IMG/VR virus record: IMGVR_UViG_3300028608_000006
Span: 62,001-126,000 of that record
Strand: one strand, 5' to 3'
DNA: 64,000 nucleotides
Under the pieces are notes generated by a model. That model searched no databases, had not been told where the DNA came from, and worked only from the letters and a program-made list of their open reading frames with translations. Both the position numbers and the translations under genes were made by a program. Positions 5,889 to 34,089 of the stretch are shown here, piece after piece. Positions within the stretch are counted from its first letter, which is position 1. Every line of letters begins with the position of its first letter.

Positions 5889-5920
5889 GTAATATAGGCC
5901 TGAAAAGAAATGTAAGTTAA
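5889..5920 (-). promoter_or_regulatory. phiKZ-type early promoter
   Basis: Minus strand TTAACTTACA-n5-TTTCAGGCCTATATTAC. Confidence 0.8.
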
Positions 5921-9832: not shown

Positions 9833-10450
9833 ATGTTCTACCCCACTCACCCGGTAACTACCTGTGGATTTCCTATGGCCTTCCCAAATCAACAATTGTT
9901 TTTGGAACGGTTCGTCGCTACTAACAAAGTCAGATATAGTGATAAACCACAATTCATCGCACAACTCGACCAACTGACACTCGCCCAGATCACCTTCACT
10001 AACCCCCGGACGGAAACCAACGGCGGTGTGACGAAGCATCTGGTCGACATGGCAGTCCCCGGGGTTTTCAACGCCTTAAACCAGAAGTTCATCCCTGGGA
10101 ACTATCCAGACCACGGTGTGGCCAATTTGGTTTCCCCCGACCCCTTGAGTGCAGCCGAACTACCCCTGGAGCTGACGCCAGGGATCTACTGGCAACTCAC
10201 TGGCGTAGGCGCGCAGAAGCAGGGTGCTGTGCTCATCCCCAAGGAAGGCAAGACCAAGGCTGCCATTATTTCGCTTATTAAGGAAAATTGTCTGTTCGCC
10301 CTTCTGGATGCAGACATCACGGTAGCCACTGATCTGTCCACCGCAACAATCGTATCCTCAACGATCATCGGTTCTTTGGTGGTGGTCGAAATGGGCGAGC
10401 CGATTCATGACGGTACTTATCTCCACGACGGCACGATTACCTACGGTTAA
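9833..10450 (+). CDS. Probable tail-associated protein; paralog of 30758-31345 and 31492-32067 (start may be ATG 9875)
   Basis: Directly upstream of the tail fibre; LFLERFVATNKVRYSD matches LFVDRFVAFNLDRYKD. Confidence 0.75.
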   Translation: MFYPTHPVTTCGFPMAFPNQQLFLERFVATNKVRYSDKPQFIAQLDQLTLAQITFTNPRTETNGGVTKHLVDMAVPGVFNALNQKFIPGNYPDHGVANLVSPDPLSAAELPLELTPGIYWQLTGVGAQKQGAVLIPKEGKTKAAIISLIKENCLFALLDADITVATDLSTATIVSSTIIGSLVVVEMGEPIHDGTYLHDGTITYG

Positions 10451-10493: not shown

Positions 10494-13400
10494 ATGCCTA
10501 CCAACATCACAGAAGTAAGTGAATTTCCGGAAGACATCCCCCTCATCGAAACAGGGGAACCGGTCCGTGGCGGTCCTACCGGCGCTGACAACCGTGCGGC
10601 CATCCTGCTGGCCAACCGTACTCGTTACCTGAAAGACCTCGTCGAGACGCTCAGCGCTCAAGGCATCAAGGTTGTCGGCACGCTGACCACTGAAGACGAG
10701 CTGCTCGAAATCGATACCAATGGCATGATGGTTGGCACCGGTTACTTCGTCGAAAACCACCTGCGTGTCTGGAACGGCAGTGGTTGGGCTGACTCGGGTA
10801 ACCTCGCTGGCCAACGTGGCATCACCTTCCTCGGTGTATGGCCGGACAACCAACAGCTGCCTGACCCATCGCTGAACGAAATCGGCGACGCATACGTCTG
10901 GCAGCACGACATCTTCCTGCTCCTGCCGACTCCTGACAACTGGGTCAAGATCGGTATCCCGGGTGCTGAAGGTAAGGACGTTTACGAAGTAGCCGTCGAA
11001 GAAGGCTTCACCGGCACCAAGACCCAGTTCCTGACCTCGCTGATCGGTAAAGATGCATTCAAGATCGCTCAGGACAACGGCTACGCTGGCAACCAAGCGC
11101 AATGGCTCGCCAGCCTGGTCGGTAAGTCCACTTACCAGATCTGGCTTGATCGCGGTGGTATCGGTAGCGAGGATGCATTCCTCACCGCGATGAAAATCAA
11201 AGGTGATAAAGGCGACAAGGGTAACACGGGTGATCAGGGTATTCCTGCTCTGGCGTTCACTGTAGCGGGTGTCAAGGCTACTGTTGGCGCACTGCCTCGT
11301 CCTGGTAACGCGGCAGATGCCTGGTTCGTAGGCACTACTCTGTACGTCTGGACCAATGGCGATTACCTCGCACTGCCTGGCATGGGTGGTCAGAGCGCCT
11401 ACGATCTGGCCGTCCTCGGTGGCTACGGCGGTACTCAGTCCCAGTGGATCGCGAGTCTGACCGGCAAGTCGGTTTATCAGACTTGGGTCGATGCTGGTGG
11501 CACGGGTGGTACTGCCGCTTTCCTGACCGCTATGAAGGTCAAGGGTGACCAAGGTATCCAAGGTATCCAGGGCGAGACCGGTCCTTCCGGTAAGAACCTC
11601 CAGGTTCTCGGCACCGTGGCAGACCAATCGGGTCTGGCGGGCAAACCACTCGTCGACCAAGCGGCCTACGTCACACTCGACACCGGTCACCTGTGGGTAT
11701 ACGTGCTGGCTAGCACTGGGTGGGTTGACCTCGGCAAGTTCCGTGGCGCTGATGGTACCAACGGTATCAACGGCACTAATGGTCTGGCGGGTCTCAGTGC
11801 TTACCAAGTTTGGTTGGCGGCGGGTAACGTCGGTTCTCAGGCTCAGTTCTTGGCTTCCCTCAAAGGAACCAATCTGGTCATTAAAGGTGCTGTAGCAACT
11901 CAGTCGGCACTGCCAGCTTCCCCAGCTGATCAGGACGCTTACGGCGTTCGTGATACCAACACCGTTCAGCTCTGGACGAACGGTCAGTGGAACAACCTGG
12001 GTGCCTTTAAAGGTGAACAGGGTGAAGAAGGTCCTGAAGGCCAAGCTGGTCACTCGTTCGCTCTCCTGGGTAGCTTTGCCAACATGGGTGCGTTGCAAGC
12101 AGCCCACCCTACTGGCGCTCTGGGTGATGCTTACCTGATCGGTTCGAACGTCGCCATTTGGAGTACGGCGAGCGGTGGTTCGTGGATCGATGGTGGTCCA
12201 GTTCGTGGTCCAGAGGGTAAGTCTGCTTATCAGCTCTGGAAAGATGCGGGTAATTCCGGCACTGAAGCCCAGTTCCTGGCGTCGCTGAAGGGTACTGACG
12301 GCGAGAACGGTGAAGACGGCGCTGATGGCCTCAACATGGTTATCACCGACGTTGTAAACACCTACAGCGCTCTGCCACTCGCTCCAGCTGACAAGTCGGT
12401 TTATGCGGTGCGGGATGTCAACAAGCTGTACGCGCGCATCGGCAGCTCCTGGAAAGACATGGGTACCTTCAAAGGTACTGACGGTATCAATGGTACCAAC
12501 GGTACTGATGGTAAAGATGGCCAGTCCGTCGAAATCGTCAAGGTCCTCACCGTAATCGATCCGAACGTTCCGTCGGTTGCCGGTAACAACGGCAAAGCTT
12601 ACGTTGACATGGACGGCAACATCTACTTCTGCATCGCTGGTTCTTGGGTGCTGGGTGGTAAGGTTGGTGCGACGGGCGACAAGGGTGAAGCCGGTACGGG
12701 TCTCTCGCTCCGTGGTACCGTGGCTACTGTGACGGCACTCCCTGCCAAAGCAACTGCTGAAGATGGCGACGGCTGGTTCACCCAAGATGACAAGATGCTG
12801 TATGTCTTGACTGACGGTGAGTGGGCGGGTCCGTTCGACATCAACGGCATGCAGGGTATTCAGGGTGAACAAGGTCCTGAAGGTCAGGCTGGTAAGTCGA
12901 TCTCGATCCTGGGTGCATACGCTACTCTGGGAGCACTGGCTGCGGCACATCCAACTGGCGCGTTGGGCGATGGTTACTTGGTTGGCAACAACCTAGCAAT
13001 CTGGACTACCGCTGGTGGTGGTCAGTGGATCGACATCGGTCTCATCCGTGGTCCTCAAGGTATTCAGGGTATCCCTGGTCCGCAAGGTATCCAAGGTGTT
13101 CCGGGTCCTCGTGGTCTGATCGGTAGCCGTTGGTTGAAGCTGCCTGTGGGTGTGGACGTTCCAGAAGTGGGCTTCACCGGTAACGTGGGTGACTGGGCGG
13201 TTTCCGAAACGTTCAAGGTCTACTACAAAACCGCTGACCAAGGCTGGATCTTCTGGGGTGAGTTGGTGGCGGGTGATGTTAACTCTCCATTCCTCGGCCA
13301 AGGCAAGGTTGTACGTTACGGTACTCAGTGGATTCCACTGCCTGTTGACGAAGTTCCGCTTCTGGTTGATGGCAAGCTGTACGTCCGTCAACTGGTCGAC

Positions 13401-15443: not shown

Positions 15444-15453
15444 GGTATAGTGA

Positions 15454-16413
15454 ATGTACGTCAAACTTAAATGGCTGAACCGTAACCAAGTTCCGGTGAC
15501 GACCAAGGTTTACAGAAACGATACACAAAAGCCCAATGACCAATTGGGTACTGCGTTGGCAACCCTCGACGGCTCGATCCTCACCTGGACCGACAACACC
15601 GTGGTGAGCCGTAGTACGTACTGGTACACCCTCGAAACCATCAACGGCGGTCAGAGTGTCTACTCAGCGCCGATAAAGGTAGTGGCTGATTATAACAATG
15701 GGCCTGGTCCTCGTGATCTGCAATGGGGTGATTCCCAGCTGGGTTACTTCGGTACGATTCTCTCGGTTGACTTCATTAACCCTGCCGACGTTACTGCGCT
15801 GCTTAACGTTCCGCCACAAGTTAACACCTCTTATCCGATGCCTGCATGGAGTAAGTGGATTCGACGGGGGAAGATTCTCTACATCCCGGCCGCGCCTATC
15901 CACCTGTACGCACCATACGACACGTACTACAAGTCGGGTGTTCACTTCGGCACCGATGACAATGGTCCTTGGATGCCGAGCACGGTAACAGTTCCGGTTA
16001 ACCAGCGAAAAATCATCACCAAAGGTTTCGACCAGTTCATTGTTCGTCTTCCCACAGGTGCTGATGACCGGAACAATCCAACGGACAGCATTATTGCGGC
16101 GCCCGCGGATAGTCTGCGTCGTTACAGCGAAGTGGCGGACCTTATTTACCCAATGGTTAACTCAGTGGTGTGTCCAAGTGCAAGGGTTCCCAAGCTCCCT
16201 AACGCGGTAACCCCCAACATCATGAACGGTGGTCGAGAAATAGCCTTGTCTACTCGCATGGGTACGACTGGATTTACTCGTGCGTTCCCGACTTCTCCAC
16301 CGACCGATCCGGTAGCTTTTGAGAAGTTGTTCGCCAGTCCATGGTCCACCGCCTGCGTTTGGATGCCGGTATTGGAAATGATCCCTGATAAAGGCATTGA
16401 GGTGGTAATATGA
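15454..16413 (+). CDS. Virion structural protein: FN3/Ig-like N-domain plus gp131-like family domain
   Basis: VKLKW...KVYR...WTD...YWY, then GPGPRDLQWGDSQLGYFG...WMPVLEMIP. Confidence 0.75.
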   Translation: MYVKLKWLNRNQVPVTTKVYRNDTQKPNDQLGTALATLDGSILTWTDNTVVSRSTYWYTLETINGGQSVYSAPIKVVADYNNGPGPRDLQWGDSQLGYFGTILSVDFINPADVTALLNVPPQVNTSYPMPAWSKWIRRGKILYIPAAPIHLYAPYDTYYKSGVHFGTDDNGPWMPSTVTVPVNQRKIITKGFDQFIVRLPTGADDRNNPTDSIIAAPADSLRRYSEVADLIYPMVNSVVCPSARVPKLPNAVTPNIMNGGREIALSTRMGTTGFTRAFPTSPPTDPVAFEKLFASPWSTACVWMPVLEMIPDKGIEVVI

Positions 16414-17309
16414 GTATCACAATCAAGTGGGTCAATCCAAACACCACGTTTGATGAGGTTCAGGTTTTCCGTTCTGACACCAAACTGGCCGCCGGGGCAA
16501 TCCCTACCAACAAGATCGCCACGATCACGGACAGCGGAATCCTCCAGTACGAGGACACCACTGCGCTTCAGAACAAGTACTACTGGTACGTGATTGCGGT
16601 TAAGAAGGGAACTGAGGTTGTGTACGCGCCCCAGTCTGTGGCCATCAACATGCCGTACACCGGTCCTGGTCCGTCGACCCTTCAGTCGGGAACGTGGGAG
16701 CGTGGATTCTTCGGGATCATGCAAGCGGCCGATTTGGTGCTTACTCAAGAAATCCAAGCAATAACTGGCGGTACCGCCAACGCCACCCAAGGAGAATGGG
16801 GTAAGTTTATCCTGAAGGGTAAAATCTTGTTTGCCCCTCTTCGGCATGTTTTAACCATTAGCTGGAATGCCTTGTACAGTGCCGGCTGCATGTACGGGGT
16901 GGCTGGGAATGGCCCCGCAACTGGCCACGGGTTGACTGGTGTGGACCAACTCAAGATCCTCAGCAAGGGAGAACATGATTTCATTATCAGAACCCCTCGT
17001 TGCCAAACGTCTGCTGATTACGTCTACAATTCTGGCGTTCCAAAGGACTACGATAGCGAATGGTTCCACTGCTTTGTTAGCATGTTTAACCAGAACAACC
17101 CGTTCCCTAGTAGCGACGTGGCGAGTTATGACCCCGCCATTTACTTCCTTCAGACAAGTAGTTACAACACTGTGTTTGCTGAGTTCAATGGCGCTAACGC
17201 CGCTTCTCAATACGCCGGCAGTAATCCAGGACAGGTCATGGCACCAGGCTCTGGTACCCCTCGCGCCAGCGCCTTCATGCAGCGCATGATCCTCGAACTC
17301 GTTCTTTAA
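16410..17309 (+). CDS. Virion structural protein: FN3/Ig-like N-domain plus gp131-like family domain
   Basis: ITIKW...QVFR...YED...YYWY, then GPGPSTLQSGTWERGFFG; ATGA overlap with the previous gene. Confidence 0.75.
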   Translation: MSITIKWVNPNTTFDEVQVFRSDTKLAAGAIPTNKIATITDSGILQYEDTTALQNKYYWYVIAVKKGTEVVYAPQSVAINMPYTGPGPSTLQSGTWERGFFGIMQAADLVLTQEIQAITGGTANATQGEWGKFILKGKILFAPLRHVLTISWNALYSAGCMYGVAGNGPATGHGLTGVDQLKILSKGEHDFIIRTPRCQTSADYVYNSGVPKDYDSEWFHCFVSMFNQNNPFPSSDVASYDPAIYFLQTSSYNTVFAEFNGANAASQYAGSNPGQVMAPGSGTPRASAFMQRMILELVL

Positions 17310-17336
17310 CACAACCCCTCCTTTAAGGAATTGATT

Positions 17337-17987
17337 ATGTCTCTTGTTACCCGCAATACCAAACTGATCCACGCTGAAACCATGGCTTACCCACTGTTCT
17401 TGTCGGACATGCCGCGGTACGCCCCTAACACCGTGTTCCCTGCCAGCGTCGATTCCGACTGCCTGATCGACTTCGAAATCGAAGTGGTCCATGACGTCGC
17501 TCAACCAGAAGGCGATATCATCTCTGAAGGCGTCCCAGAGTTCCGTGACGGCGAATGGTACCAGACCTGGACCGTCCGTAACTTCAGCGACGAAGAGAAG
17601 GCTGCAAAGCTTGCAGAGCGTAAATCCGTTATGCAGGGAGAAGCCGAGCAACTCCGTCTGAACGCCTTCGCTTTTGGCTTCCCGTACCAGTTCGGTGAAA
17701 ACGTTTACCACGTACAAGTACGTACTGGTGACCGTGGCAACATCTCCGACCTGCGCACCATCGCCAAGGAAGTGATCGCTGGCGGCGGTGAGATGACTTT
17801 CGATTTCCGTACGCTGGAAAACGTTGAAGTTCCACTCACTGCTCCAGAGATGGTAGCGCTGGCCGACAAGACCTTCGTGCAAGTGGTTGCCGGCTACAAG
17901 GTGATCTGGGCTTACAAGAAGGCCATCGATCTCGCCACCACCATGGAAGAGCTCCCTACAGCACCGGGAACCTTCTTCACCCTGTAA
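17337..17987 (+). CDS. DUF4376-like tail fibre assembly/chaperone protein
   Basis: N-terminal YPL...WYQTW segment plus C-terminal FRTLENVEVPLTAPEMVAL...KAIDLATTMEEL, typical of tail-fibre-linked DUF4376 proteins. Confidence 0.65.
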   Translation: MSLVTRNTKLIHAETMAYPLFLSDMPRYAPNTVFPASVDSDCLIDFEIEVVHDVAQPEGDIISEGVPEFRDGEWYQTWTVRNFSDEEKAAKLAERKSVMQGEAEQLRLNAFAFGFPYQFGENVYHVQVRTGDRGNISDLRTIAKEVIAGGGEMTFDFRTLENVEVPLTAPEMVALADKTFVQVVAGYKVIWAYKKAIDLATTMEELPTAPGTFFTL

Positions 17988-17995
17988 CCCTCAAC

Positions 17996-18015
17996 CCTCC
18001 CTCTTCGGAGGGAGG
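17996..18015 (+). terminator. 8-bp hairpin with a UUCG tetraloop
   Basis: CCTCCCTC-TTCG-GAGGGAGG. Confidence 0.7.
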
Positions 18016-18038
18016 ATTAACCACATGGAGTTTTAACG

Positions 18039-18497
18039 ATGAGTGACTTTACAAGGTTCAGTGCAGTTGAGTCTTTGAGTTACGACCAGGGTGCTAGTCG
18101 TTTCTACGGCAAGGACTTCTGGAAGGTGGCCGCAGGATATCGTTATTACATCGGGTTCAAGGGATCTTCTCGGTACATTGACGTTCCGACTGGGTTCCTA
18201 ACTGATGGCGCTACCATCCCACGGTTCTTGTGGTGGCTGCTTCCTCCTTTGGGCGAATACAGTCAGGCCACCACCCTTCACGATTACCTGTGTAGAACAT
18301 ACAAAATCATCGAAGTGATCGATGGTGTTCCAACGGAGGTGGCGGTAACCCGTAAGGAGATTGACGGGATCTTACGCGAAGCAATGGAAGTGCTTGAGGT
18401 AGCGGCTTGGAAACGCTTCCTGATCAATTGCGGCGTTGAAGGTTACCGGGTAGTGACTAATCCCACTAAACCCAAAGGACTCGCACTCGCTGAATAA
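18039..18497 (+). CDS. DUF1353-family protein
   Basis: VPTGFLTDGATIPRFLWWLLPPLGEYSQATTLHDYLC signature. Confidence 0.85.
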   Translation: MSDFTRFSAVESLSYDQGASRFYGKDFWKVAAGYRYYIGFKGSSRYIDVPTGFLTDGATIPRFLWWLLPPLGEYSQATTLHDYLCRTYKIIEVIDGVPTEVAVTRKEIDGILREAMEVLEVAAWKRFLINCGVEGYRVVTNPTKPKGLALAE

Positions 18498-18526
18498 CAA
18501 CATATTCCTTTGGGGGAGAACACATC

Positions 18527-19717
18527 GTGTTCGAATCTCTTCTATTTACAGCCGCGTTGGCTGGAGCTGACGACAACTCTGATTTGGCATTTCCAGGAGG
18601 AACGATTTACAGAGGGGTCGTTAAATCTGCTAACTTTATTACGGGCGACGTCCTGGCACAAGCCATCGGTCTGACAGACGGTACCCCTCACAACAACGCA
18701 GCGGGTTGGTTGCATTTCATTGAAGCCGACGGCACCGAGCTTTACATCTCGAAAAAGACCCTGCGGTATGGTCTGACGTATCAGTCGATTGACACGGCAC
18801 AATCCGGTAACAGCAAAGAAGTTACAATTGGTGGCGAAGTTTACATCGTCAGATTTATCAACGGTAATGAGGGCGCCACTAAGTTTGCTTACCAGCGTTA
18901 CATGTTGCCGTTGATTGATCCACCAAAACGGAATTCCTACCCAACAGACCCGGTGGTCCCAACATGGGGTTACTACACACCACTCATGATGGGTAACAAC
19001 GAACCAGACTACACCCAGCCTGGTTCTCAAACCATGTGTGCGGAAGCATATGGAGCGGGCTGGCTGACGCGCGGTTATCCTAATTTTGCATCCGTATGGT
19101 ACCAAGACAACCTCACCCCTCAGCTGTACCATGGCTGGCGCCCCCTGCTTATTAAGAAGTCTAGCCTACCGGTATCGGCCTACAAAGGACTGGTGAACCA
19201 AGCTAACTTTATCACGTTTGCAGCACTGGCTACAACGATGGGGGTTACCGAAGGCACACCGAGCAATGACACAGTGGAGTGGCTGCATTTCGTCGAAGAG
19301 GGTAAAGAAGTTTATATCCCCCGCATGGGTATTCGTCACACCATCAGTTGGGAACAATTGAATGCTAGAAACTTGATCACGGGTAACCGAACCATTGACA
19401 TTGGCGGACAAACGTTCAAGGTTCGCCTCATGACAGGGTGTGAACAAGACCCAGGTATCGCTGGCGGTGGTTTAGCGGCGCGGGAATGGAAGAAGTACAT
19501 CGTTGGTCTGACTGATGGGACGTACGACTCTCAAACAGCAGCTTGGGCGGGCGTGGGTAACGACGGAATCAATATTAGTATTTTGCAGGAAGCGTCTGCT
19601 AACGAAACGGGTGCCCACTCGGGCGCGGGTTATCCTGGTATCGCTGACATTTGGTATATCTCCGCCGATCAACTACACCCGTTCTTCAACTGGCGTCCAT
19701 TGCTGGAAAAGGTATGA
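18527..19717 (+). CDS. Virion structural protein with two tandem gp131-like family domains
   Basis: Y(R/K)G(V/L)V...NFIT...GT(P)...WLHF(I/V)E occurs twice, each ending WRPLL. Confidence 0.75.
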   Translation: MFESLLFTAALAGADDNSDLAFPGGTIYRGVVKSANFITGDVLAQAIGLTDGTPHNNAAGWLHFIEADGTELYISKKTLRYGLTYQSIDTAQSGNSKEVTIGGEVYIVRFINGNEGATKFAYQRYMLPLIDPPKRNSYPTDPVVPTWGYYTPLMMGNNEPDYTQPGSQTMCAEAYGAGWLTRGYPNFASVWYQDNLTPQLYHGWRPLLIKKSSLPVSAYKGLVNQANFITFAALATTMGVTEGTPSNDTVEWLHFVEEGKEVYIPRMGIRHTISWEQLNARNLITGNRTIDIGGQTFKVRLMTGCEQDPGIAGGGLAAREWKKYIVGLTDGTYDSQTAAWAGVGNDGINISILQEASANETGAHSGAGYPGIADIWYISADQLHPFFNWRPLLEKV

Positions 19718-19779
19718 GTTAATAACGATACCCTCCCCTCTAGGGAGGTTTCTACATCGCTTTCTCCATGGGGAATACC

Positions 19780-21984
19780 ATGATTGAACAATTAGTCTCG
19801 ACAGGGAGTCAGGTAGAAATACCATTCGTTCCACCTGCTGTAGAGCCAGGCAACCCGTTTCAAGGATTCGTCAGCTCTGACGATCTGATCGACGGCGCTG
19901 CACTGGCTTCTTTACTTGCGCTGACCTCGGGCACTCCGTTCAACAACAAAGCAGGTTGGCTGAAATACATCGATGCGGGCAAAACGTTCTACATCGCACG
20001 TAAGCCACTTCGTTACGGAACTACAGTTGCTGCTTATAAAGCGGCTGCGTTGTTGGCTGGTAAGAACGTTACCATTCGTGGCGACATCTACAAGGTCCGC
20101 TTGATGTCTGGTATGGCCGCGGATCCGTTCAACTCCATTATCGGTATTGCCGGCGGCGGAGAGTGGAACCAGTACTTGTACCCGATCTTTGCAGCGGCTA
20201 ACCGTCCTACAGCGGCTGTGTGGTCGTATTACACGGCGGCTGATCTAGGACTCGCGCTCAACGATAGTCTCTATGGACAAAAGGGTTGGGTCACGGTCAC
20301 CAAAGATCAGCACAACACCATCACTACCGCTTTGGCTGCTCGCGGCTGGGACTACTCTGGTGGGACGAGTGTTAACCCTATCGACCGACGCACCGTTATC
20401 AACGATGCTAACGTGAACGAAGGTAACGGTACAGCTAGTCTGGACGTCTATGGTTTCCGACCTTTGTTGGAATTCATTGGCGTGGCTCCTCCTGAAGACC
20501 TGTACTACGGTGAAATTGCCGACGCGGACTTCATCACTCCGAGCGCGCTTGCTGCTGTGGTGAACTTAGCGTCTGGGGGTACTGTAACCAACGCCACGTC
20601 CAATTGGTTGAAGTATCGTTATAAAGGCAAGACCACGTACCTCGCGAAGAAGCCCCTGAGACACGGAATGACTTGGGAGCAAATGGATGCGGTAGGCGTC
20701 GTTAAGGGGAATATCCCCTATCTGTTCGGTGGTAAACGCTACGCGTTGACTCTTCCAACAGGTTCTGATACCGACCCAACTCCTAGCTACGGGTCTATTG
20801 CAACGGCTGGGTCTTTCAACGACCTGATTTACCCTGTGTACAACGGCGCGGCTGGTGGTCAGGCTGAGGTTATTGCCTATCCTCGTTGGGCTGCGTTTAC
20901 GGACGCCGACTTGGGCTTCGCAACAAATAAAGCCGCAGCTTCCGGAGGACTTGGTACGCTGACCTGGTGTAAAGAGGTTATCACCGGTGGGGCTAACCAC
21001 TTACTGCGTGGTTACAACGATGCTGACAACGTCGGTAACCGACAGATACTGGCGGGTTGGTACGTCGCTAACGGTGGTACTCAGCAGTACGCAGGGTGGC
21101 GTCCGCAGATCGAAGAGTTGACCGATCTGTCGAACGCTTGGTCAAGGGTGGCTAACCTTCCTGCCACACGGATGAACATTGGTTCAGCTTCGGTTGGCGG
21201 AAAGATTTATACCTTCGGTGGTGATGCGAACGATGGCAGTAACCCCACGGGAGCCTTGAGTGTCTACGACCCTGCGTTGGGAACATGGACCGCTAAAGCG
21301 GTGGGCCCTGCTATCCGTACTTGGCACTGCATGTGCGAAGGGACTGACGGTAAGGTCTACGTGCACGGTGGCTATAACTCCAGTGGCGTCTTTAGTGACC
21401 TGTGGGCTTATGACCCAGTAGCTAACACTTGGGCGCAAAAGGCTAGTGCCATCGACCGGTACGACGGTGTTATGACGTCTTACGGTGGCAAGTTGTACGT
21501 TGTTGGTGGTTATACCAACACCTACGCGAATGACCTGCGTTGCTACGACATCGCTACCAACACATGGAGTGTTAAAGCGAGCTTTGTAGGTGGTCGTCGT
21601 CACATGACGTTAAATGCTGTAGACGGGAAGCTGTACATGTCGGGCGGCAACGTGGGTGGTACCGAATTCTGGTCTTACGATATCGGTACTGATGTCTGGA
21701 CAAAGATGGCCGACCACCCAATGGGGAACATCGTTCAACACAGGTCCACGGTAGTGGGTGGGAAGATCTACTTCTTCGGCGGTAACGCCGGCGGGACGAT
21801 TGTCAAGAAGCTGTGGGTCTACGATCCTGTTGGTAACACGTGGACTCAACTGGCGGATATACTGACCACTAATGGCAGGACTACGCCGTTCATGACAGCC
21901 CCAGGCGACGGCCGCATTTACGTAGGCGGCGGTTATTATCCTGGCGTTGGTGTGTTGTCTGACGTCTGGACGTACAAACCATAA
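19780..21984 (+). CDS. Tail-tip/receptor-binding-like protein: two gp131-like domains plus a C-terminal six-bladed Kelch propeller
   Basis: Domains end FRPLLEF and WRPQIEE; six Kelch repeats follow (KIYTFGG, KVYVHGG, KLYVVGG, KLYMSGG, KIYFFGG, RIYVGGG, each followed by Y/W-D-x-W). Confidence 0.8.
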   Translation: MIEQLVSTGSQVEIPFVPPAVEPGNPFQGFVSSDDLIDGAALASLLALTSGTPFNNKAGWLKYIDAGKTFYIARKPLRYGTTVAAYKAAALLAGKNVTIRGDIYKVRLMSGMAADPFNSIIGIAGGGEWNQYLYPIFAAANRPTAAVWSYYTAADLGLALNDSLYGQKGWVTVTKDQHNTITTALAARGWDYSGGTSVNPIDRRTVINDANVNEGNGTASLDVYGFRPLLEFIGVAPPEDLYYGEIADADFITPSALAAVVNLASGGTVTNATSNWLKYRYKGKTTYLAKKPLRHGMTWEQMDAVGVVKGNIPYLFGGKRYALTLPTGSDTDPTPSYGSIATAGSFNDLIYPVYNGAAGGQAEVIAYPRWAAFTDADLGFATNKAAASGGLGTLTWCKEVITGGANHLLRGYNDADNVGNRQILAGWYVANGGTQQYAGWRPQIEELTDLSNAWSRVANLPATRMNIGSASVGGKIYTFGGDANDGSNPTGALSVYDPALGTWTAKAVGPAIRTWHCMCEGTDGKVYVHGGYNSSGVFSDLWAYDPVANTWAQKASAIDRYDGVMTSYGGKLYVVGGYTNTYANDLRCYDIATNTWSVKASFVGGRRHMTLNAVDGKLYMSGGNVGGTEFWSYDIGTDVWTKMADHPMGNIVQHRSTVVGGKIYFFGGNAGGTIVKKLWVYDPVGNTWTQLADILTTNGRTTPFMTAPGDGRIYVGGGYYPGVGVLSDVWTYKP

Positions 21985-26535: not shown

Positions 26536-27025
26536 CGCCCTTACCAAAGTACCTAGCGACCACAACCTTTACATACTCCTTAGGCGGGAGTACCCATTCA
26601 GCAGCCTTCTTGTGAAAGCGTCTGTATTCCTTATCGGCCAGAATCCAGATCACCCGATCAGCCACAACCAAACCACCGTTATCAAAACCCAAGTAGGGTT
26701 CTTTCAGCTTACGGCATTTGCTGAACGTTTCTTTGATAGCGGTCTCTTCGGTGTGCCCTTCCAAGATCTTGTCGAGGTAGTGCCGATACAAACCGATCAT
26801 TTCCAGATGGTCGTAGTCCACCCAGCGGTTACGATAATGACTGATGCTGATGTGGGGCGTTGACCAACTGATATCTTTCATATCAGGTTGGTAGCCGTGA
26901 CGACCCCAATCAACATGACCGATAGTCCCCACGTTTACAACATCACCGTAATTAACCCGACCAGTGTAACGAAGAACACGTTCGTTATTACCGACAGTGA
27001 GGGAGTTCATTCGAATCGACTTCAT
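26525..27025 (-). CDS. Hypothetical protein
   Basis: GGGGAG RBS; ATGA overlap with the upstream gene. Confidence 0.75.
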   Translation of the reverse strand: MKSIRMNSLTVGNNERVLRYTGRVNYGDVVNVGTIGHVDWGRHGYQPDMKDISWSTPHISISHYRNRWVDYDHLEMIGLYRHYLDKILEGHTEETAIKETFSKCRKLKEPYLGFDNGGLVVADRVIWILADKEYRRFHKKAAEWVLPPKEYVKVVVARYFGKGDET

Positions 27026-27471
27026 ACGCTCCCCCAAATATCGTTAAGTAGCGAGAGTACGCCCCGCAACTTCGCCAGGTTCTCGTCCGTTTCAGGGAGA
27101 TCATGAGAAACCATACCGATCTCTTTAGCCGCCGAGAATACTTGTGTTTTGGTGCCGTGCAACAACATAACCTTGAGTTGTTGTTTCTCGGTTGCTTTGT
27201 TGACCCAGACATAGCTGTTGTGAACCGGGGCTAGAGGCTGCTTTCCGTCGCGAGCATCCGCAATGGCCCGCGCGATCCACCGGAAATAACCGGGGTATTT
27301 CCTCGCGAGAGGCATAATGATCTCCTCATATGCCTTCTTGAAACCAGCCGTAGGCGCATTCACGTCTTGGTTGACTGGTTCATTTTCAGTCGCCTTAAGG
27401 AACCGGGCGATTACGTCTTTGGCCTCGTGTTGAAGAACGCGGAGTTGTTCTTCATTTAAAATGTCGTTCAT
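27022..27471 (-). CDS. Hypothetical protein
   Basis: 149 aa, AAGGT RBS. Confidence 0.75.
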   Translation of the reverse strand: MNDILNEEQLRVLQHEAKDVIARFLKATENEPVNQDVNAPTAGFKKAYEEIIMPLARKYPGYFRWIARAIADARDGKQPLAPVHNSYVWVNKATEKQQLKVMLLHGTKTQVFSAAKEIGMVSHDLPETDENLAKLRGVLSLLNDIWGSV

Positions 27472-27756: not shown

Positions 27757-28341
27757 CTATCTCAACGCCAGATGGAGAACAGGTTTATACAGGCGGCAAC
27801 CCCCGCCTTTATTACCCGGATAGAGGACGTAATCGATCATGCCCGGTTGAGTATCTTCGGTAACCGACAAGGTAACGTCAACCGACTCACCCTTCCATTT
27901 ACCCACAAGGTGAGCGTGATACTCGCCCCGTTTGTTGTAATCCAGCAGCTCAACAAAGAACGGCCATACCACGCGGTAGAAATGGAAGGCACTAGTACGA
28001 GAATCCAAAACCAAGGCCTCGTACAGGTTCTTCCAAGCCGTCTCAAAATCCCGACTAGGTTTGTCAACGACGTACGTGCTATATCGAAGCAGACCCAGCC
28101 AGTAGTAGCGAGTTTGCCGGCCATCGCTGATCGAAATCAAACGATGACCGTTACACTGAGTGACAGCGTAGAAATTGATCGGGCCCTTCAAACCGTGACG
28201 AGCGCGGATAACACCTTCTTTGAAACACCGGCGGCGGAGTTGGGTACATTGGGTTGGAATGCCGGAATCAAAGCGGATGTTCAGTTGTTGGTTGTTGCGT
28301 GCTTGGAAAACGCCGGTTACCAGATACTCTTTTGAAAGCAT
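27757..28341 (-). CDS. Hypothetical protein
   Basis: GGAGGT RBS before ATG 28341. Confidence 0.75.
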   Translation of the reverse strand: MLSKEYLVTGVFQARNNQQLNIRFDSGIPTQCTQLRRRCFKEGVIRARHGLKGPINFYAVTQCNGHRLISISDGRQTRYYWLGLLRYSTYVVDKPSRDFETAWKNLYEALVLDSRTSAFHFYRVVWPFFVELLDYNKRGEYHAHLVGKWKGESVDVTLSVTEDTQPGMIDYVLYPGNKGGGCRLYKPVLHLALR

Positions 28342-28364: not shown

Positions 28365-29663
28365 TCAATCGATAATAGAACGCTCTGCCGCCTTGGGATC
28401 GTCTGCGACCTCCTGCTTGTCAACAGGTTTGCAGAAACCACCGTAAGTTGCCATGATGAGCCCCTTGTCAGTGAAGAAGGTGTACTTGATTGCGGGTTTG
28501 AGGATTTGTGTACCCCGCTCGCCGTCAGAGAAACGGTAAGCCCAGTACTTTGGTTCAGCATCACCAATGATGTCCAGTCGAACACCCGGCAGGTTCACCA
28601 CGGTAACTTCTTGTACATCACTTTCCTGTACCCAGCGCTGACCCCACAAAGAGTACGCCGGATAGCTGTAAGTGCGCTTACCGGTGATGGTAAGGTTGCC
28701 CACTTTGATCGAGCATTCACGAGCATCGGAATACCGACCGATCTTGAGATCTCGCTGGATGTACGCATACCCCGCAACAACGAACGCGGACACAATCAAC
28801 AGGATCATGAACCACAGATAGCAGAGGTATTTGATACGAGCACGACGCAGGGTCTTGACTAATGCTTTCTCGGTCATGAGGTCGCGAGCCATCGCACCCT
28901 TGTCCTCGACAGGAACGTCAGGAACAGGTTCAGGTTGAGCCTTTACTTTCTGCCGCTCGTCGTACAGGCGGATTTGCTCCTTGACCAACTGCGGCATGTA
29001 AACCTGTTTCCAGATAGCCTGACCATCGAAATCCCTGATCCAAATCTCGTCGCGCACAATAAAGGCGTCGTGCTCGGCGTAGAGCGCCGGCATAGGGAGA
29101 CAATCTGTACGACCCACGATGTTGAACAACCCATCTTCCTTGAATGCACTCGCCAGTTGGGTCACCAGCGCATCATACTGCTCAAGAGGAACAGTAGGCG
29201 TAGGAGGAACAGAAGTCCCCGCTACGTCCTGATGCTCCCACTTGCCATTCAGCATTACCGCCAGCCGACCTTTCCAGAAGTAAGCGTCCAGGTGCTTATA
29301 CCCCTCGGGTCCTGGGAACTCCTGATCGTGAGGCCACGTACCGAGCATATGGAGTGAGTCGTTTTCCGGAAGTACATCTTCCAGAAGCCCCTCAGTGTCG
29401 ATTTCAGCAGGCTTGTCTTCATGCCAGGCTAAGTCAGGACCGTAAATCAAATGCTGCCCACGAAAAGTGACAGCGTCCCCAATTTGAGGATTTTCGATAT
29501 CGAGCAGGCTGGCCGTAGACGGTAGGTCACAAAGGAACCTGCGCGTCTGTTTACCCGAAGCCAGATCCTCAAAGAACTGTTTCGACTCGATCCCCCAATC
29601 TGGGTATTGCGGAGTGGTGGTCTTAGCGTTCAGATCAGTATCGTCTTGACTGCTAATGATCAT
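28365..29663 (-). CDS. Single-pass membrane protein carrying three tail-fibre-type modules
   Basis: AAGGA RBS before ATG 29663; LGTWPHDQEFPGP...DAYFW matches the tail fibre LGVWPDNQQLPDP...DAYVW; TM helix YLCYLWFMILLIVSAFVVAGYAYI. Confidence 0.75.
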   Translation of the reverse strand: MIISSQDDTDLNAKTTTPQYPDWGIESKQFFEDLASGKQTRRFLCDLPSTASLLDIENPQIGDAVTFRGQHLIYGPDLAWHEDKPAEIDTEGLLEDVLPENDSLHMLGTWPHDQEFPGPEGYKHLDAYFWKGRLAVMLNGKWEHQDVAGTSVPPTPTVPLEQYDALVTQLASAFKEDGLFNIVGRTDCLPMPALYAEHDAFIVRDEIWIRDFDGQAIWKQVYMPQLVKEQIRLYDERQKVKAQPEPVPDVPVEDKGAMARDLMTEKALVKTLRRARIKYLCYLWFMILLIVSAFVVAGYAYIQRDLKIGRYSDARECSIKVGNLTITGKRTYSYPAYSLWGQRWVQESDVQEVTVVNLPGVRLDIIGDAEPKYWAYRFSDGERGTQILKPAIKYTFFTDKGLIMATYGGFCKPVDKQEVADDPKAAERSIID

Positions 29664-29751
29664 AATTAAATTCCTTGTTTTAGGCAAAAAGTAAAATAAC
29701 CCCACCTACTCCATCAGGGGCTACCTAATGGAGTAAATGGAAGTTAAGTGT

Positions 29752-30425: not shown

Positions 30426-30442
30426 GTAATATAGGTTTGACT
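30426..30442 (-). promoter_or_regulatory. phiKZ-type early promoter
   Basis: Minus strand AGTCAAACCTATATTAC. Confidence 0.75.
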
Positions 30443-30469: not shown

Positions 30470-30646
30470 TTAGGATGGAAAGTTCCAGCCGATCAACGCA
30501 CCCAGAACAACAGCACACACCGCCAGTGTGAAGATCGTGATCTTGATGCGCTTGCGGCGTTGGGCTTGTTTCTTCAGGATGTCGGTGTGCATGTTCTCCA
30601 TGAAGTTGCAGTCTTCTTCTTTACCCTTGATTTCCGGATTTACCAT
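30470..30646 (-). CDS. Small membrane protein (58 aa)
   Basis: Read manually: MVNPEIKGK...RRKRIKITIFTLAVCAVVLGALIGWNFPS; AAGGAG RBS. Confidence 0.7.
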   Translation of the reverse strand: MVNPEIKGKEEDCNFMENMHTDILKKQAQRRKRIKITIFTLAVCAVVLGALIGWNFPS

Positions 30647-30757: not shown

Positions 30758-31345
30758 TTACAGGTCTTCTGGATAAGTCAGTTGACCGTAGTCGGTGTCA
30801 GGGATGGTGATGATGGCTTCGGAGGCGAGGGCAAAAGGAATCACCCCGTAGATGCATGGACCGTCAACCGTCAGCTTAGTAGCGTCAGAAACGATCTCGC
30901 TGCCCGATACAACCACGCGAACTGCGGTGGTGAAGGCAGTCTTGGCGGCGGCCTGTTGGCTACCTACGGCCATACCGTAAGGCAACAGAACCATGATTCG
31001 ATCAGTGGTACTGTCAGTGTCTTTGTAGCAGTAGACACCCGGAACACTTTTAGCCAGCACAGCGGCTTTGTTGGGTTGCGTGAGCGGGTCAACCAGGTCG
31101 TAACCATTCACGTCATGCAGGTCCGCCGCATGGTACGTTTGGTTAATACCGATGAAGTTACGCGACGCGGATTTGACGGTAAGGGAACGTACACCTGTTC
31201 CAGAACCGGTGAGGGATTCGAAAGTCAGTTCACTTTCGGTAAGACCCGTAAACAGCGCTTTCATCGGAGCGTCGTCTTTATAACGATCCAGGTTGAAAGC
31301 GACGAAACGGTCAACAAACAAACCCATACGGGTAGCTTTGGCCAT
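30758..31345 (-). CDS. Paralog of 9833-10450 and 31492-32067 (probable virion protein)
   Basis: GGAG RBS before MAKATR; shared RYKDD...SRNFIG and GVYCY segments. Confidence 0.75.
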   Translation of the reverse strand: MAKATRMGLFVDRFVAFNLDRYKDDAPMKALFTGLTESELTFESLTGSGTGVRSLTVKSASRNFIGINQTYHAADLHDVNGYDLVDPLTQPNKAAVLAKSVPGVYCYKDTDSTTDRIMVLLPYGMAVGSQQAAAKTAFTTAVRVVVSGSEIVSDATKLTVDGPCIYGVIPFALASEAIITIPDTDYGQLTYPEDL

Positions 31346-31431
31346 TTGTAGAACTCCGGGAGGTGATGAAAAGGTGACGAAGTAAAAACCCCGTGACATA
31401 GTATCCCCACCGGTTTCCCGGGCAAGCATAA

Positions 31432-31491: not shown

Positions 31492-32067
31492 TTACAGGTC
31501 CAGCGGTTCAGCGTCTTCTTCCAGCTCGTCGACCGGCGCCTTGGCAACGGCGTATTCGATTTCGCCAGCGATGAAGTCGCTGCTGACCACGATGGTGCTA
31601 GTGCCGTCGCCCAGGGTAATGTCGCTACCCGCTACGTCGTACTTCAGAGCCGCGATCAGAGCAGAGACCGCTTCCTCGCCAACGTCGGCGCCTTCAACGT
31701 CAGGAACCACGACGATCAGTTTGGTTTCGCCGTCTTCGCCCAGGTAGGAGAACACGCCGCCTTCGACTTGACCCAGAGCAGCGGTCTTGTCTTCCAGCAC
31801 TTCGTCGGAAGTCAGGGTGATCACCTTGTCGCTGTGAACATCCACCGGACGCCATTTCTGGGCAGGACCCTGGAACGAACGGGAAACCGATTTGATGCTG
31901 GCGCTGTGAATGCCGCCGGATTTGGTGACCACGCCGAGTTCCAGATCTTCCAGACCGAGGTTGTCGAACTTCGCCAGCATGCGAGGATCGTCTTTGTAGA
32001 TCTGCTGGTTCTTCTGGACGAACGGGGTGAGCAGGAGCAGCATAGCAGCAAGTTTAGCTTGTGACAT
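31492..32067 (-). CDS. Paralog of 30758-31345 and 9833-10450
   Basis: YKDDPRMLAKF...KSVSRSFQG...GVFSY; GAGGA RBS; strong codon bias. Confidence 0.8.
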   Translation of the reverse strand: MSQAKLAAMLLLLTPFVQKNQQIYKDDPRMLAKFDNLGLEDLELGVVTKSGGIHSASIKSVSRSFQGPAQKWRPVDVHSDKVITLTSDEVLEDKTAALGQVEGGVFSYLGEDGETKLIVVVPDVEGADVGEEAVSALIAALKYDVAGSDITLGDGTSTIVVSSDFIAGEIEYAVAKAPVDELEEDAEPLDL

Positions 32068-32385: not shown

Positions 32386-34089
32386 TTAACGCTTAACGGC
32401 TACTGCCGACAACTTGTCACCCAGCAGGATGCTGCTTGCATTGGCCAGAATTTTGGCTGTTTGCAAACCACCACGAAGCGCAGTGATAGTTGCGTAGGCA
32501 GTGTCGTAGACGCCCAGCTCCTCACTGGTACCCTTCTCCCCGGTAGCCAGGTTGGTGCAGACTGGAACAACGTCACCCTCTATAGAGTTCCAGGTAAGTT
32601 CTTTGAATGGACTTACCTCGTCGGAGGTCTGCTGCATCAGGTGGTTGTACGAGGCGTAGCAGATCTTGCCGAGACCAGAAATGATGCTGGCTTTGACAGT
32701 GGTATGACGTTGGTCTTCTGGGGATTCCTGGATAAACCCAGTGTTGTCGTTCAGAGCACGATGCAGAGCCGACAGGACGCGATGACCGGAAATAACCAAC
32801 GACGATCCAACACCTGGCAAGATACCATTCACCAGAGCGCTCTTGACCGCCTTCACAACGTCTTCGAACCGGTCAATGCGTTCTTTTACGTCCGAGTAGG
32901 TTTCGCCGCCCACAAAGATCGTGACGAGTTCACCGCGCAGGTTACGGATACGGGTCTCGTTGAACTTCGCCCGCACACTGAAACGATCACCCATTTCGTA
33001 GCTGCTCAGCTCACCGACAATTGCATCGGCACGCTTGTTCAGCTCCAGACGAACGTCTTCAGGAATATCACTCAGGATAGAACGAGTTCCATTGACGGTC
33101 AGTTTGGAGCGGACCGGATTGATAACAGTGTTGCCGACGTCTTCTAGGTTGGTGAAGATCGGCGCTTGGAACATGGCCGCGATGTCTTGCATCAACAGAG
33201 TGCCGACAGAACCACCGGCGTTGGTATTGATAGCCACAAACGTAGCGCCCGGGATACCTTTGGACGGTTGACCGGCTGCTTCTGCCTGACGCTGCTGCAT
33301 GGTGCTGTTGTTGATACGCGCCATGACTTGGCAGGCATCGTGTTCGACCGAACGACCGATCACCACGACAGTTTTGCCGGAATAACGAATAGCAAGCTCG
33401 ATCATCACTTCAGTCGCATCACCACCACGACCGACGTTACCGTCAATGATGATAGGGTAGAACTCGGTGAAGTCAGTGTCGCCGCCGTTGCCGTTCTTGG
33501 CGAAAGCTGGGTTACTGAAGTGCATATTGATCGGCAGACCATTGCTGCGAACCACCTTGTCAGTGGAAGATTGGCCTTCCTTGAGTTCGATCTCAGGGTA
33601 ACGATCGCCGGACGCCTTATAGATGTCGGTAACGATACGGCTGAGTTCTTCGTCGTTGTTGGAAGAGGTCAACGCCAACTTGAACAGACGAGGGTCATCA
33701 ACCTTAACCTGGATGGTCATGGCTTTCAGTTCTTCGACGATCAGGTTCATGCACTCTTCGATGTACTTCTGTTCACGGAAGCTTGGGTGAGCAGTGAACA
33801 GTTCGTACAGCAGAGAGGTCAGCATTACGGTGGTAGTGGTGCCGTCGCCGCATTCGTGGTCGGTCTTGATGGCCGCTTCAGTGATCACACGATTGATCAG
33901 TTCGTAGCGTGGGTCATCGAAACGAATCGACTTGGCCACAGTCACACCATCTTTGGTAACCTTTACAGCGGTGCCGTTGGCGATGTACGCCAGTTTGCCG
34001 TTTGGACCCATGGTGGCCACAACAGCTTTCTTGACCTGGCTAACCACGTCTTTTACGAATTCTTGGGTATCATCGATTGTCAACATCAT
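32386..34089 (-). CDS. groEL: Phage-encoded GroEL-like chaperonin
   Basis: TMGPNGK, VTKDGVTVAKSI, GDGTTTT, VGGETYSDVKERIDRFED, GILPGVG, GVYDTA motifs; 567 aa. Confidence 0.95.
   Translation of the reverse strand: MMLTIDDTQEFVKDVVSQVKKAVVATMGPNGKLAYIANGTAVKVTKDGVTVAKSIRFDDPRYELINRVITEAAIKTDHECGDGTTTTVMLTSLLYELFTAHPSFREQKYIEECMNLIVEELKAMTIQVKVDDPRLFKLALTSSNNDEELSRIVTDIYKASGDRYPEIELKEGQSSTDKVVRSNGLPINMHFSNPAFAKNGNGGDTDFTEFYPIIIDGNVGRGGDATEVMIELAIRYSGKTVVVIGRSVEHDACQVMARINNSTMQQRQAEAAGQPSKGIPGATFVAINTNAGGSVGTLLMQDIAAMFQAPIFTNLEDVGNTVINPVRSKLTVNGTRSILSDIPEDVRLELNKRADAIVGELSSYEMGDRFSVRAKFNETRIRNLRGELVTIFVGGETYSDVKERIDRFEDVVKAVKSALVNGILPGVGSSLVISGHRVLSALHRALNDNTGFIQESPEDQRHTTVKASIISGLGKICYASYNHLMQQTSDEVSPFKELTWNSIEGDVVPVCTNLATGEKGTSEELGVYDTAYATITALRGGLQTAKILANASSILLGDKLSAVAVKR

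What the first reader, a model, noticed from the sequence alone, without database searches (positions are those of the whole stretch)
28365..29663. Early inner-membrane protein built from the tail fibre's own modules
Seen: three modules N-terminal to a TM helix match repeats of the tail fibre at 10494. LGTWPHDQEFPGPEGYKHLDAYFW matches LGVWPDNQQLPDPSLNEIGDAYVW. LPSTASLLDIENPQIGDAVTFRGQHLIYGPDLAW resembles LTTEDELLEIDTNGMMVGTGYFVENHLRVWNGSGW. FNIVG...LPMP...DAFIV...IW resembles FTVAG...LPRP...DAWFV...LYVW. They are followed by a basic stop (RRARIK), a TM and a ~110-aa Cys-containing C-domain. The gene is second in an operon under the early promoter at 30426, 14 kb from the tail locus. Inference: an N-in membrane-tethered fibre mimic. 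It could nucleate fibre trimer assembly at the membrane, act as a decoy for host sensors of tail proteins, or couple periplasmic sensing to lysis timing or superinfection exclusion. I know no described system of this architecture.
Basis: partly seen in the sequence, partly recalled or inferred. Interest (0 to 1): 0.75.

Follow-up and report, generated by a model that had tools for sequence, protein, structure and literature searches.

The report
Membrane protein carrying tail-fibre repeats
A soil jumbo phage related to Pseudomonas phage EL encodes an inner-membrane protein of a widespread but unstudied family, and in this lineage its cytoplasmic end has picked up copies of a small building block otherwise found in tail fibres; the similarity is statistically real, but its function is unknown.

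Summary
The 432-aa ORF (28365-29663, minus strand) has three ~45-aa beta modules, a basic stretch, one TM helix and a two-cysteine C-domain. A profile built only from the repeats of its 19 homologues hits one other ORF among the phage's 1145: the tail fibre, at fibre module 2 (E 6e-12). Profile-profile comparison with the other fibre modules also passes (E 5e-8; 0 of 100 column shuffles come near). Predicted folds match tail fibres of other phages.

The interpretation needs re-centring. The protein belongs to an unnamed family (217 clusters; phage EL gp149, Noxifer gp238, Lu11 gp282, Bacillus phage AgentSmith_148). The conserved part is the TM helix plus a periplasmic Ig-like beta-sandwich with two near-invariant cysteines. 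Only 25 of 164 representatives carry fibre repeats (1-7 copies), and that part evolves much faster. The fibre module concerned also sits in the fibre of EL, whose gp149 has no repeats. This is therefore an old domain capture, not a copy of this phage's own fibre.

The early-type promoter motif is real. However, a conserved strong hairpin with a U-tract separates gene 1 from this gene.

Function is untested. I favour an envelope role for the periplasmic domain, with the repeats as a cytoplasmic stalk.

The parts
28365..29663 (-). Gene for the 432-aa bitopic membrane protein (P0001), an EL gp149-like family member with N-terminal fibre-type repeats
29412..29540 (-). Repeat 1 (aa 42-84), a degenerate fibre-type beta module preceded by helix 25-36
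   Evidence: repeat profile iE 1.6e-12; strands 42-82 in the model
29226..29354 (-). Repeat 2 (aa 104-146), the best-conserved module (LGxWPHDxE[LF]P...DAxxWKG...W). It is the one that matches fibre module 2
29001..29123 (-). Repeat 3 (aa 181-221), preceded by helix 164-175
   Evidence: repeat profile iE 1.7e-9; model
28830..28904 (-). Conserved juxtamembrane helix (DKGxMAR...KRLKR type) ending in the basic stretch R273-K278; cytoplasmic side
28761..28829 (-). Single transmembrane helix (aa 279-301)
28431..28748 (-). Periplasmic all-beta domain (aa 306-411), a generic Ig-like sandwich. C317 and R330 are invariant and C411 nearly invariant (>=90%) in the full-length alignment A2; all three are invariant in the C-domain alignment A3. 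Motif TGxRxYSY
29700..29742 (-). Strong stem-loop followed by a U-tract, between the upstream gene and this gene. Conserved in position in three related phages despite different sequence
30426..30442 (-). Early-type promoter motif (..CAAACCTATATTAC), one of 13 strand-specific copies in the genome
29752..30324 (-). Upstream gene, 190 aa, homologue of EL gp148 (30% identity, E 2e-27)
27757..28341 (-). Downstream gene, 194 aa, homologue of EL gp150 (26% identity, E 2e-11)
10821..10946 (+). Module 2 (aa 110-151) of the 1302-aa tail fibre, the fibre segment homologous to the ORF's repeats

Best explanation
The gene encodes a bitopic inner-membrane protein of an unnamed jumbo-phage family, typified by Pseudomonas phage EL gp149.

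Shown:
- The family core is a basic juxtamembrane helix, one TM helix and a ~110-aa all-beta C-domain with two conserved cysteines (both invariant in the C-domain alignment).
- The positive-inside rule puts the N-terminus in the cytoplasm and the C-domain in the periplasm.
- In one subclade of EL-like soil phages the cytoplasmic N-terminus carries 1-7 copies of a ~45-aa beta module. This module is homologous to tail-fibre shaft modules and closest to the conserved second module of EL-type fibres.
- The gene lies in a block of small minus-strand genes behind an early-type promoter motif, in conserved synteny: GroEL ... promoter, gp148-like, this gene, gp150-like.

Inferred:
- The two cysteines form a periplasmic disulfide.
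- The module was captured from a fibre gene and then duplicated within the gene.
- The conserved work is done by the periplasmic domain at the cell envelope soon after infection. The most likely role is shielding or altering an envelope component, for example excluding superinfecting phages.
- The fibre-derived repeats act as a cytoplasmic oligomerising or spacer stalk, the role that helical, coiled-coil-like N-termini appear to play in other family members.

My confidence is about 0.85 for the anatomy and evolutionary reading and about 0.3 for the envelope/exclusion function. The figure given is a blend.
For: Family and core:
- hmmsearch of A1 against 1.84 billion representatives gave 217 hits, almost all to profile positions ~235-405 only. 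Median length is 219 aa.
- C317 and R330 are invariant, and C411, G328, Y334, G341, T354, G381 and Y394 nearly so.

Topology:
- 153 of 161 members have more K+R on the N-side of the TM helix (mean 5.6 against 1.9).
- 160 of 161 have exactly two cysteines after the TM helix.
- In 107 members the last cysteine is the penultimate residue.

Fold:
- The C-domain has pLDDT >95 in the full model and a mean of 86 when modelled alone.
- It is a generic Ig-like sandwich, best Z 6.4.

Repeat homology to fibres. Foldseek also returns tail fibres of PhiPA3, Psa21, Rebecca and RP12 at E 1e-5 to 1e-7.

Optional, fast-evolving N-terminus.

Direction of transfer: the module is present in the fibres of EL and of G001, while EL gp149 lacks repeats.

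Synteny with EL and two metagenomic relatives.

Promoter motif. Such conserved AT-rich motifs mark early operons in jumbo phages with their own RNA polymerases (PMC7598289).

Neighbourhoods of short family members are small unknown genes plus nucleotide-metabolism genes, not lysis or tail genes.
Against: - No experiment or annotated relative gives a function. Pfam, PHROGs and PDB sequence and fold searches are blank for the core.
- The exclusion role rests only on analogy of topology and timing.
- Trimerisation of the repeats was not shown. The homotrimer prediction returned 'no answer'.
- A conserved terminator-like hairpin upstream makes the expression time uncertain.
- A soil metatranscriptome shows the upstream gene covered but this gene hardly at all. 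Those are low-depth contigs and may include DNA.
- UniProt names the Noxifer homologue 'virion structural protein', although both Noxifer records in the phage collection searched here (NC_041994.1 and MF063068.1) call it hypothetical.
Confidence: 0.5

Rival explanations
1. Fibre mimic. The cytoplasmic repeats bind the tail fibre, or a partner of fibre module 2 such as a baseplate adaptor. They thereby tether or nucleate fibre or virion assembly at the membrane, or they decoy a host sensor of tail proteins.
For: The repeats are closest to one particular fibre module that is conserved at the same N-proximal place in EL-type fibres. Modules of this kind are otherwise seen in virion fibres and collagen-like proteins.
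Against: The repeats are absent from most of the family, including EL, whose fibre has the module. Copy number varies from 1 to 7 and the sequence diverges fast. There is no sign that the repeats track the phage's own fibre, since profile scores to the own, G001 and EL fibres are alike. The gene sits in an early-type block, whereas fibres are usually made late (my own knowledge). No complex evidence exists.
Confidence: 0.15
2. Lysis-timing protein, either a class III holin-like or an antiholin-like membrane protein. It would resemble T4 T in layout: N-in, one TM helix and a large disulfide-bonded periplasmic domain.
For: The same overall topology and a conserved periplasmic cysteine pair. The T4 T layout is from my own knowledge.
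Against: No Pfam holin hit at E<=1 and no T or RI structure among the fold matches. The domain is all-beta. No endolysin or spanin lies next to it in any of the contexts examined. In AgentSmith an annotated lytic murein transglycosylase lies three genes downstream, after a DnaB helicase gene. The gene lies in an early-type block.
Confidence: 0.1
3. Virion or ejected protein. A fibre-like or internal virion component whose hydrophobic helix inserts into the host membrane at infection.
For: Fibre-type modules at the N-terminus. The UniProt name 'virion structural protein' for the Noxifer homologue.
Against: Both Noxifer records in the phage collection searched here (NC_041994.1 and MF063068.1) say hypothetical protein. 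The gene sits among small non-structural genes behind an early-type motif. The basic flank, 23-residue hydrophobic helix and extracytoplasmic cysteine pair are typical of a resident membrane protein, and most members are only ~180 aa.
Confidence: 0.07
4. The resemblance to the fibre is chance or compositional.
For: The fibre HMM without module 2 gives E 0.68.
Against: The independent profile gives E 5.7e-12 with no other hit in 1145 ORFs. hhalign without module 2 gives E 4.8e-8, and 0 of 100 shuffles come near. There are PHROG tail-fibre hits in 11 homologues and Foldseek hits to many fibres.
Confidence: 0.02

Closest known systems
Pseudomonas phage EL gp149 (YP_418182.1) and relatives: Noxifer gp238, Lu11 gp282, Bacillus phage AgentSmith_148. 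All are annotated as hypothetical proteins.
   Same: The basic juxtamembrane helix, single TM helix and two-cysteine all-beta C-domain (34% identity over 158 aa to EL gp149, E 1e-21). For EL, the gene order is also the same: GroEL ... promoter, gp148, gp149, gp150.
   Different: These relatives have helical or charged N-termini and no fibre-type repeats. Outside the EL-like clade the neighbouring genes are unrelated. None has a known function. The family was not detected in phiKZ or RisingSun.
Shaft modules of jumbo-phage tail fibres (phrog_3904; the window's own fibre at 10494-14402; EL's 1046-aa fibre)
   Same: The ~45-aa beta module with G.W...LP...DA..W...W, related by profile, profile-profile and predicted-fold comparison.
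   Different: The ORF has no collagen runs, no helical Y..W...FL.SL.G repeat and no C-terminal chaperone or peptidase-like part. It has a TM helix and lies in an early-type block. It is not a tail fibre.
T4 holin T (class III holin layout; my own knowledge)
   Same: N-in, one TM helix and a large periplasmic domain with a disulfide.
   Different: No sequence or fold similarity. No lysis neighbours. The domain is all-beta.
Phage superinfection-exclusion membrane proteins such as T4 Imm, P22 SieA and HK97 gp15 (my own knowledge; P22 SieA paper PMC10883804 listed, not read)
   Same: Phage-encoded inner-membrane proteins that act at the envelope; the lytic-phage examples are made early.
   Different: No homology was detected to any of them. 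The analogy is of place and timing only.
RskA-type anti-sigma factors
   Same: Cytoplasmic N-domain, one TM helix and an extracytoplasmic beta domain. Weak Foldseek hits.
   Different: TM-scores are 0.1-0.15. There is no anti-sigma domain and no partner sigma gene. This is not a supported relationship.

Membership tests
EL gp149-like membrane protein family (unnamed; not in Pfam or PHROGs v4) | Basic stretch followed by a single TM helix, with N-in polarity | tested here: met
   R273-K278, then aa 279-301. Across the family 153 of 161 members have the K+R excess on the N side.
EL gp149-like membrane protein family (unnamed; not in Pfam or PHROGs v4) | C-domain of ~110 aa with the conserved cysteine pair, R330 and the TGxRxYSY and GExG motifs | tested here: met
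   C317 and R330 are invariant and C411 nearly invariant (>=90%) in A2. C317, R330 and C411 are all invariant in the C-domain alignment A3. BLASTP to EL gp149 gives E 1e-21. The profile search gave 217 hits.
EL gp149-like membrane protein family (unnamed; not in Pfam or PHROGs v4) | Synteny with gp148-like and gp150-like genes downstream of GroEL (EL-like clade only) | tested here: met
Tail fibre protein (phrog_3904 type) | Contains the ~45-aa beta shaft module | tested here: met
Tail fibre protein (phrog_3904 type) | Collagen-like runs, helical Y..W..FL.SL.G repeats and a C-terminal distal or chaperone part, as in the window's fibre | tested here: not met
   No Pfam Collagen hit and no PHROG hit for the whole ORF. 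The HMM of the fibre's helical repeat gives no hit at E<=10.
Tail fibre protein (phrog_3904 type) | Presence in the virion and late expression | not testable with these tools
   Only indirect evidence: an early-type promoter block, and a conflicting database name for the Noxifer homologue.
Class III holin (T4 T) | Sequence or fold relationship to T, and linkage to an endolysin or antiholin | tested here: not met
   No Pfam hit at E<=1. No T or RI chain among the fold matches. No lysis gene adjacent in any context examined; in AgentSmith a lytic murein transglycosylase gene lies three genes downstream.
i-spanin | N-terminal TM helix, helical coiled-coil periplasmic domain, and an adjacent or embedded lipoprotein o-spanin gene | tested here: not met
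   The periplasmic domain is all-beta. The downstream 194-aa product has no signal or lipobox-like start (sequence).
Superinfection-exclusion proteins (Imm, Sp, SieA, HK97 gp15) | Homology to a characterised exclusion protein | tested here: not met
   No Pfam or PHROG family matches the core.
Superinfection-exclusion proteins (Imm, Sp, SieA, HK97 gp15) | Blocks DNA entry or adsorption of a second phage when expressed | not testable with these tools
   Needs plating and DNA-entry assays.

The most novel reading that the evidence does not exclude
The repeats form a cytoplasmic, membrane-anchored 'mini-fibre' that engages the fibre's second module or its binding partner. This would couple virion or tail assembly, or a host sensor of tail proteins, to a periplasmic sensing domain. 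It would be a trans-membrane link between virion morphogenesis and the envelope not described for any phage.
Probability: 0.12. Interest if true: 0.85.

Novelty: new variant of a known kind. Interest (0 to 1): 0.45.

Why it matters
- It defines an unannotated, widespread family of jumbo-phage membrane proteins: 217 clusters at 50% identity, found in phages of both Gram-negative and Gram-positive hosts. The family has a testable topology and a culturable entry point, EL gp149 in P. aeruginosa.
- It documents a statistically secure case of a virion fibre module re-used on the cytoplasmic side of a non-structural membrane protein. That is an unusual direction of domain shuffling.
- If the repeats turn out to bind fibre or baseplate parts, it would reveal a new link between assembly and the envelope.
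- If they do not, the result is still a useful annotation and a candidate early envelope-acting protein, possibly for exclusion, in a phage group where such functions are unknown.

Tried and rejected
- Homotrimer prediction of aa 100-432 in three copies. The verdict was 'no answer' (score 0.00, controls not run), so it is evidence neither way. That used the only complex job, so no fibre/ORF hetero-complex was modelled.
- By eye the helices before modules 1 and 3 looked like the fibre's Y..W...FL.SL.G repeat. An HMM of the seven fibre copies gives no hit in the ORF, so I rejected the idea.
- Collinear derivation from fibre modules 1-2-3. Only the 2-2 pair is significant.
- Test of whether the repeats track each phage's own fibre. 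Loci L005 and L007 did not reach a module-bearing fibre; the 944-aa neighbour is something else. With G001 and EL, the scores to own and foreign fibres are alike.
- Sequence searches of the PDB with the fibre, the family and the repeat profile found nothing significant. phiKZ gp184 (E 0.32) and a crAss001 head fibre (E 0.54) are only hints.
- Fold searches of the C-domain (Foldseek PDB and AFDB, VIA-align wide, ESM Atlas) gave only generic beta-sandwich matches.
- The literature holds nothing on EL gp149 or on jumbo-phage exclusion proteins of this kind.
- Metatranscriptome contigs are too shallow to time expression.
- Tree of the C-domain. On a quick tree there are 6 changes of the 'has repeats' state, for 25 carriers among 138 rows. 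The careful search and the one-clade test did not finish, and no shuffled-label control was obtained, so single versus multiple gain is open.
- Pfam RNA-polymerase models on the phage's own genome gave one sub-threshold beta-subunit match (E 2.5e-4) and nothing for beta-prime.

Full report
**Setting**

The window is bases 62001-126000 of a 231,788-bp IMG/VR virus record, found in soil and rhizosphere metagenomes. Its GroEL-like chaperonin (32386-34089, minus strand) is 44% identical to that of Pseudomonas phage EL and 39% to those of Erwinia phages RisingSun and Joad. No nucleotide-level relative exists among 50,697 phage records. It is therefore an uncultured, EL-like jumbo phage. A DNA helicase, an NAD-dependent ligase and many virion-protein paralogues fill the rest of the window.

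**The ORF**

- The ATG at 29663 has an AAGGA 8 nt upstream, and the homologues start with the same residues.
- The longer GTG-initiated frame would begin inside a hairpin and is unlikely.
- The product (432 aa, P0001) has no Pfam or PHROG hit.

**Is the resemblance to the fibre real? Yes.**

- BLASTP against the 1302-aa fibre (10494-14402) gives one HSP at E 2e-4.
- I collected 19 homologues and aligned them (A1). The N-terminal part consists of a variable number of copies of a W-rich unit.
- A profile of the central copy finds three copies in P0001 (aa 42-84, 104-146, 186-215) and one to seven in the homologues.
- A profile made from 47 such copies contains no fibre sequence. I searched it against all 1145 ORFs of 50 aa or more in the phage genome. 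Besides the ORF itself, the only hit better than E 1 is the fibre, at aa 110-151, E 5.7e-12.
- In the other direction, an HMM of the fibre's ten modules ranks the ORF as the first non-self hit (E 2.2e-4). That rests on fibre module 2: without it the E-value is 0.68, and module 2 itself scores poorly against the other nine.
- Profile-profile comparison is clearer. Repeats against all ten modules give P 96.8%, E 2.7e-10. Against the nine others they give P 94.9%, E 4.8e-8. One hundred column-shuffled controls reach at most score 13, against 42.6 and 34.0 for the real alignments.
- Independently, 11 of 150 family members match phrog_3904 (tail fibre, best E 4.5e-10), which is also the fibre's own best PHROG.
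- Foldseek with the AF2 model returns tail fibres and collagen-like proteins of many phages at E 1e-5 to 1e-7 with probability near 1.

Taken pairwise, only module 2 against module 2 is significant (z 9.5). The fibre's helical repeat and collagen runs are not shared.

**What the protein is**

- Against phage genomes, only aa 257-412 find relatives. These are hypothetical proteins of EL and its close kin, Noxifer, Lu11, pPa_SNUABM_DT01 and Bacillus phage AgentSmith.
- A profile search of 1.84 billion representatives gives 217 hits. Nearly all match only the last ~170 profile positions, and the median length is 219 aa.
- The family core is thus a basic juxtamembrane helix, one TM helix and a C-domain of about 110 aa.
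- C317 and R330 are invariant in the full-length alignment. C411, G328, Y334, G341, T354, G381 and Y394 are nearly so.
- Among 161 members with a clear TM helix, 153 have more K+R on the N side (mean 5.6 against 1.9). Of the 161, 160 have exactly two cysteines after the TM helix, and in 107 the second is the penultimate residue.
- This pattern indicates N-in/C-out with a periplasmic disulfide. The bond itself is inferred.
- AF2 models the C-domain confidently. It is a beta-sandwich that begins with a long hairpin.
- Foldseek finds nothing significant in the PDB or AFDB. VIA-align's best match is Z 6.4 to a DUF3244 Ig-like sandwich, among generic FN3- and C2-like hits.
- The core is in neither Pfam nor PHROGs v4.
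- The family was not detected in phiKZ or RisingSun.

**The repeats are an accessory**

- Only 25 of 164 representatives carry them. P0060 has a weak fibre-PHROG match as well.
- In the closest relative the N-terminal 222 residues are 74% identical where the C-domain is 100% identical. In the next relatives the figures are 47-49% against 79-82%.
- Other members have charged, helical N-termini (sequences).
- The matching fibre module sits at the same N-proximal place in the fibres of an IMG/VR relative (G001) and of EL. The profile scores of 33-37 bits are like that of the window's own fibre. Yet EL gp149 has no repeats.
- The simplest reading is that a fibre module was captured by the membrane-protein gene in a subclade and then multiplied. 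It is not a recent copy of this phage's own fibre.
- On a quick tree the carriers cluster but not cleanly. The formal tests did not finish.

**Context and expression**

- The gene order GroEL, small genes, promoter motif, gp148-like, this gene is shared with EL and with two metagenomic relatives. The gp150-like gene follows in the window, in EL and in one relative.
- TATATTAC occurs 13 times in the genome, always on the minus strand and with flanks close to TTTCAaaCC. One copy is at 30426-30433.
- The promoter annotated upstream of EL gp148 is similar.
- Conserved AT-rich motifs of this kind mark early operons in jumbo phages that carry their own RNA polymerases (PMC7598289). Here I found only a sub-threshold polymerase beta match.
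- Between the upstream gene and this one lies a hairpin of -31.7 kcal/mol (z -4.8) followed by a U-tract.
- A hairpin of similar strength stands at the same place in L007, L005 and EL, with different sequences in the last two.
- Co-transcription is therefore not assured. The hairpin may terminate, attenuate or stabilise transcripts.
- Soil metatranscriptome contigs cover the upstream gene and leave a gap over the promoter motif. They show only one 151-nt piece of this gene, at 92% identity. The depth is too low, and DNA carry-over too possible, to conclude anything.

**Mechanism**

Shown: the anatomy, the topology signal, the homology of the repeats, the family, the synteny and the promoter motif.

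Inferred:
- The conserved periplasmic domain acts at the envelope early in infection. I favour exclusion or protection, by analogy with other early phage inner-membrane proteins.
- The repeats serve as a cytoplasmic oligomerising or spacer stalk.

The fibre-mimic reading is not excluded and would be the more interesting outcome. The optional and variable nature of the repeats argues that it is not the family's main function. The holin-like and virion-protein readings have little support. Chance similarity is refuted.

**Verdict**

This is a real and statistically secure feature, with an architecture not described before, in a family that has never been studied. Its significance is moderate until a function is shown.

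Noticed in passing
window 29700-29742 (-); also L007:9919-9968, L005:9923-9967, L001:3497-3540: A very stable stem-loop with a U-tract lies between the gp148-like and gp149-like genes. It is kept in four phages although the sequences differ. After it comes a TTATTTTAC-like string that resembles the promoter motif.
   Followed up: partly
genome-wide; in the window at 5896, 30433, 34152 and 40036 (all minus strand): There are 13 copies of TATATTAC with flanks close to TTTCAaaCC, all on one strand. They are a likely early-promoter set. One sits just upstream of the GroEL-like gene.
   Followed up: partly
window 9833-10450 (+), 30758-31429 (-), 31492-32067 (-): Three paralogues of phrog_18233 (unknown function). 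One lies directly upstream of the tail fibre gene and two directly upstream of the promoter of the operon studied here. This is a second link between the two loci.
   Followed up: partly
window 27022-27471 (-): Contigs of two other runs join 27026/27029 directly to 27481. The 149-aa ORF is therefore absent in related strains, a presence/absence polymorphism.
   Followed up: no
window 14472-19717 (+) and 19768-21984 (+): A run of paralogous virion-protein genes (phrog_1062/3589/16120) follows the fibre gene. It looks like an expanded family of fibre- or baseplate-associated proteins.
   Followed up: no
window 10494-14402 (+), aa 1032-1085: The fibre's C-terminal part matches phrog_15439 (annotated 'peptidase'). 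This may be a C-terminal intramolecular chaperone or auto-cleavage domain (my own inference, not checked).
   Followed up: no
window 30470-30646 (-): A 58-aa protein with one TM helix ends the preceding operon. A gene of 58 or 53 aa stands at the same place in L005 and L007.
   Followed up: no
window 3771-4826 (+) and 50388-51581 (-): Two paralogues of phrog_21850 (unknown function) lie 46 kb apart on opposite strands.
   Followed up: no
G000:C1 positions 99 and 231758: The same G-run plus promoter-motif sequence occurs at both ends of the record. This suggests terminal redundancy or a circular assembly overlap, although IMG/VR classes the record as linear.
   Followed up: no
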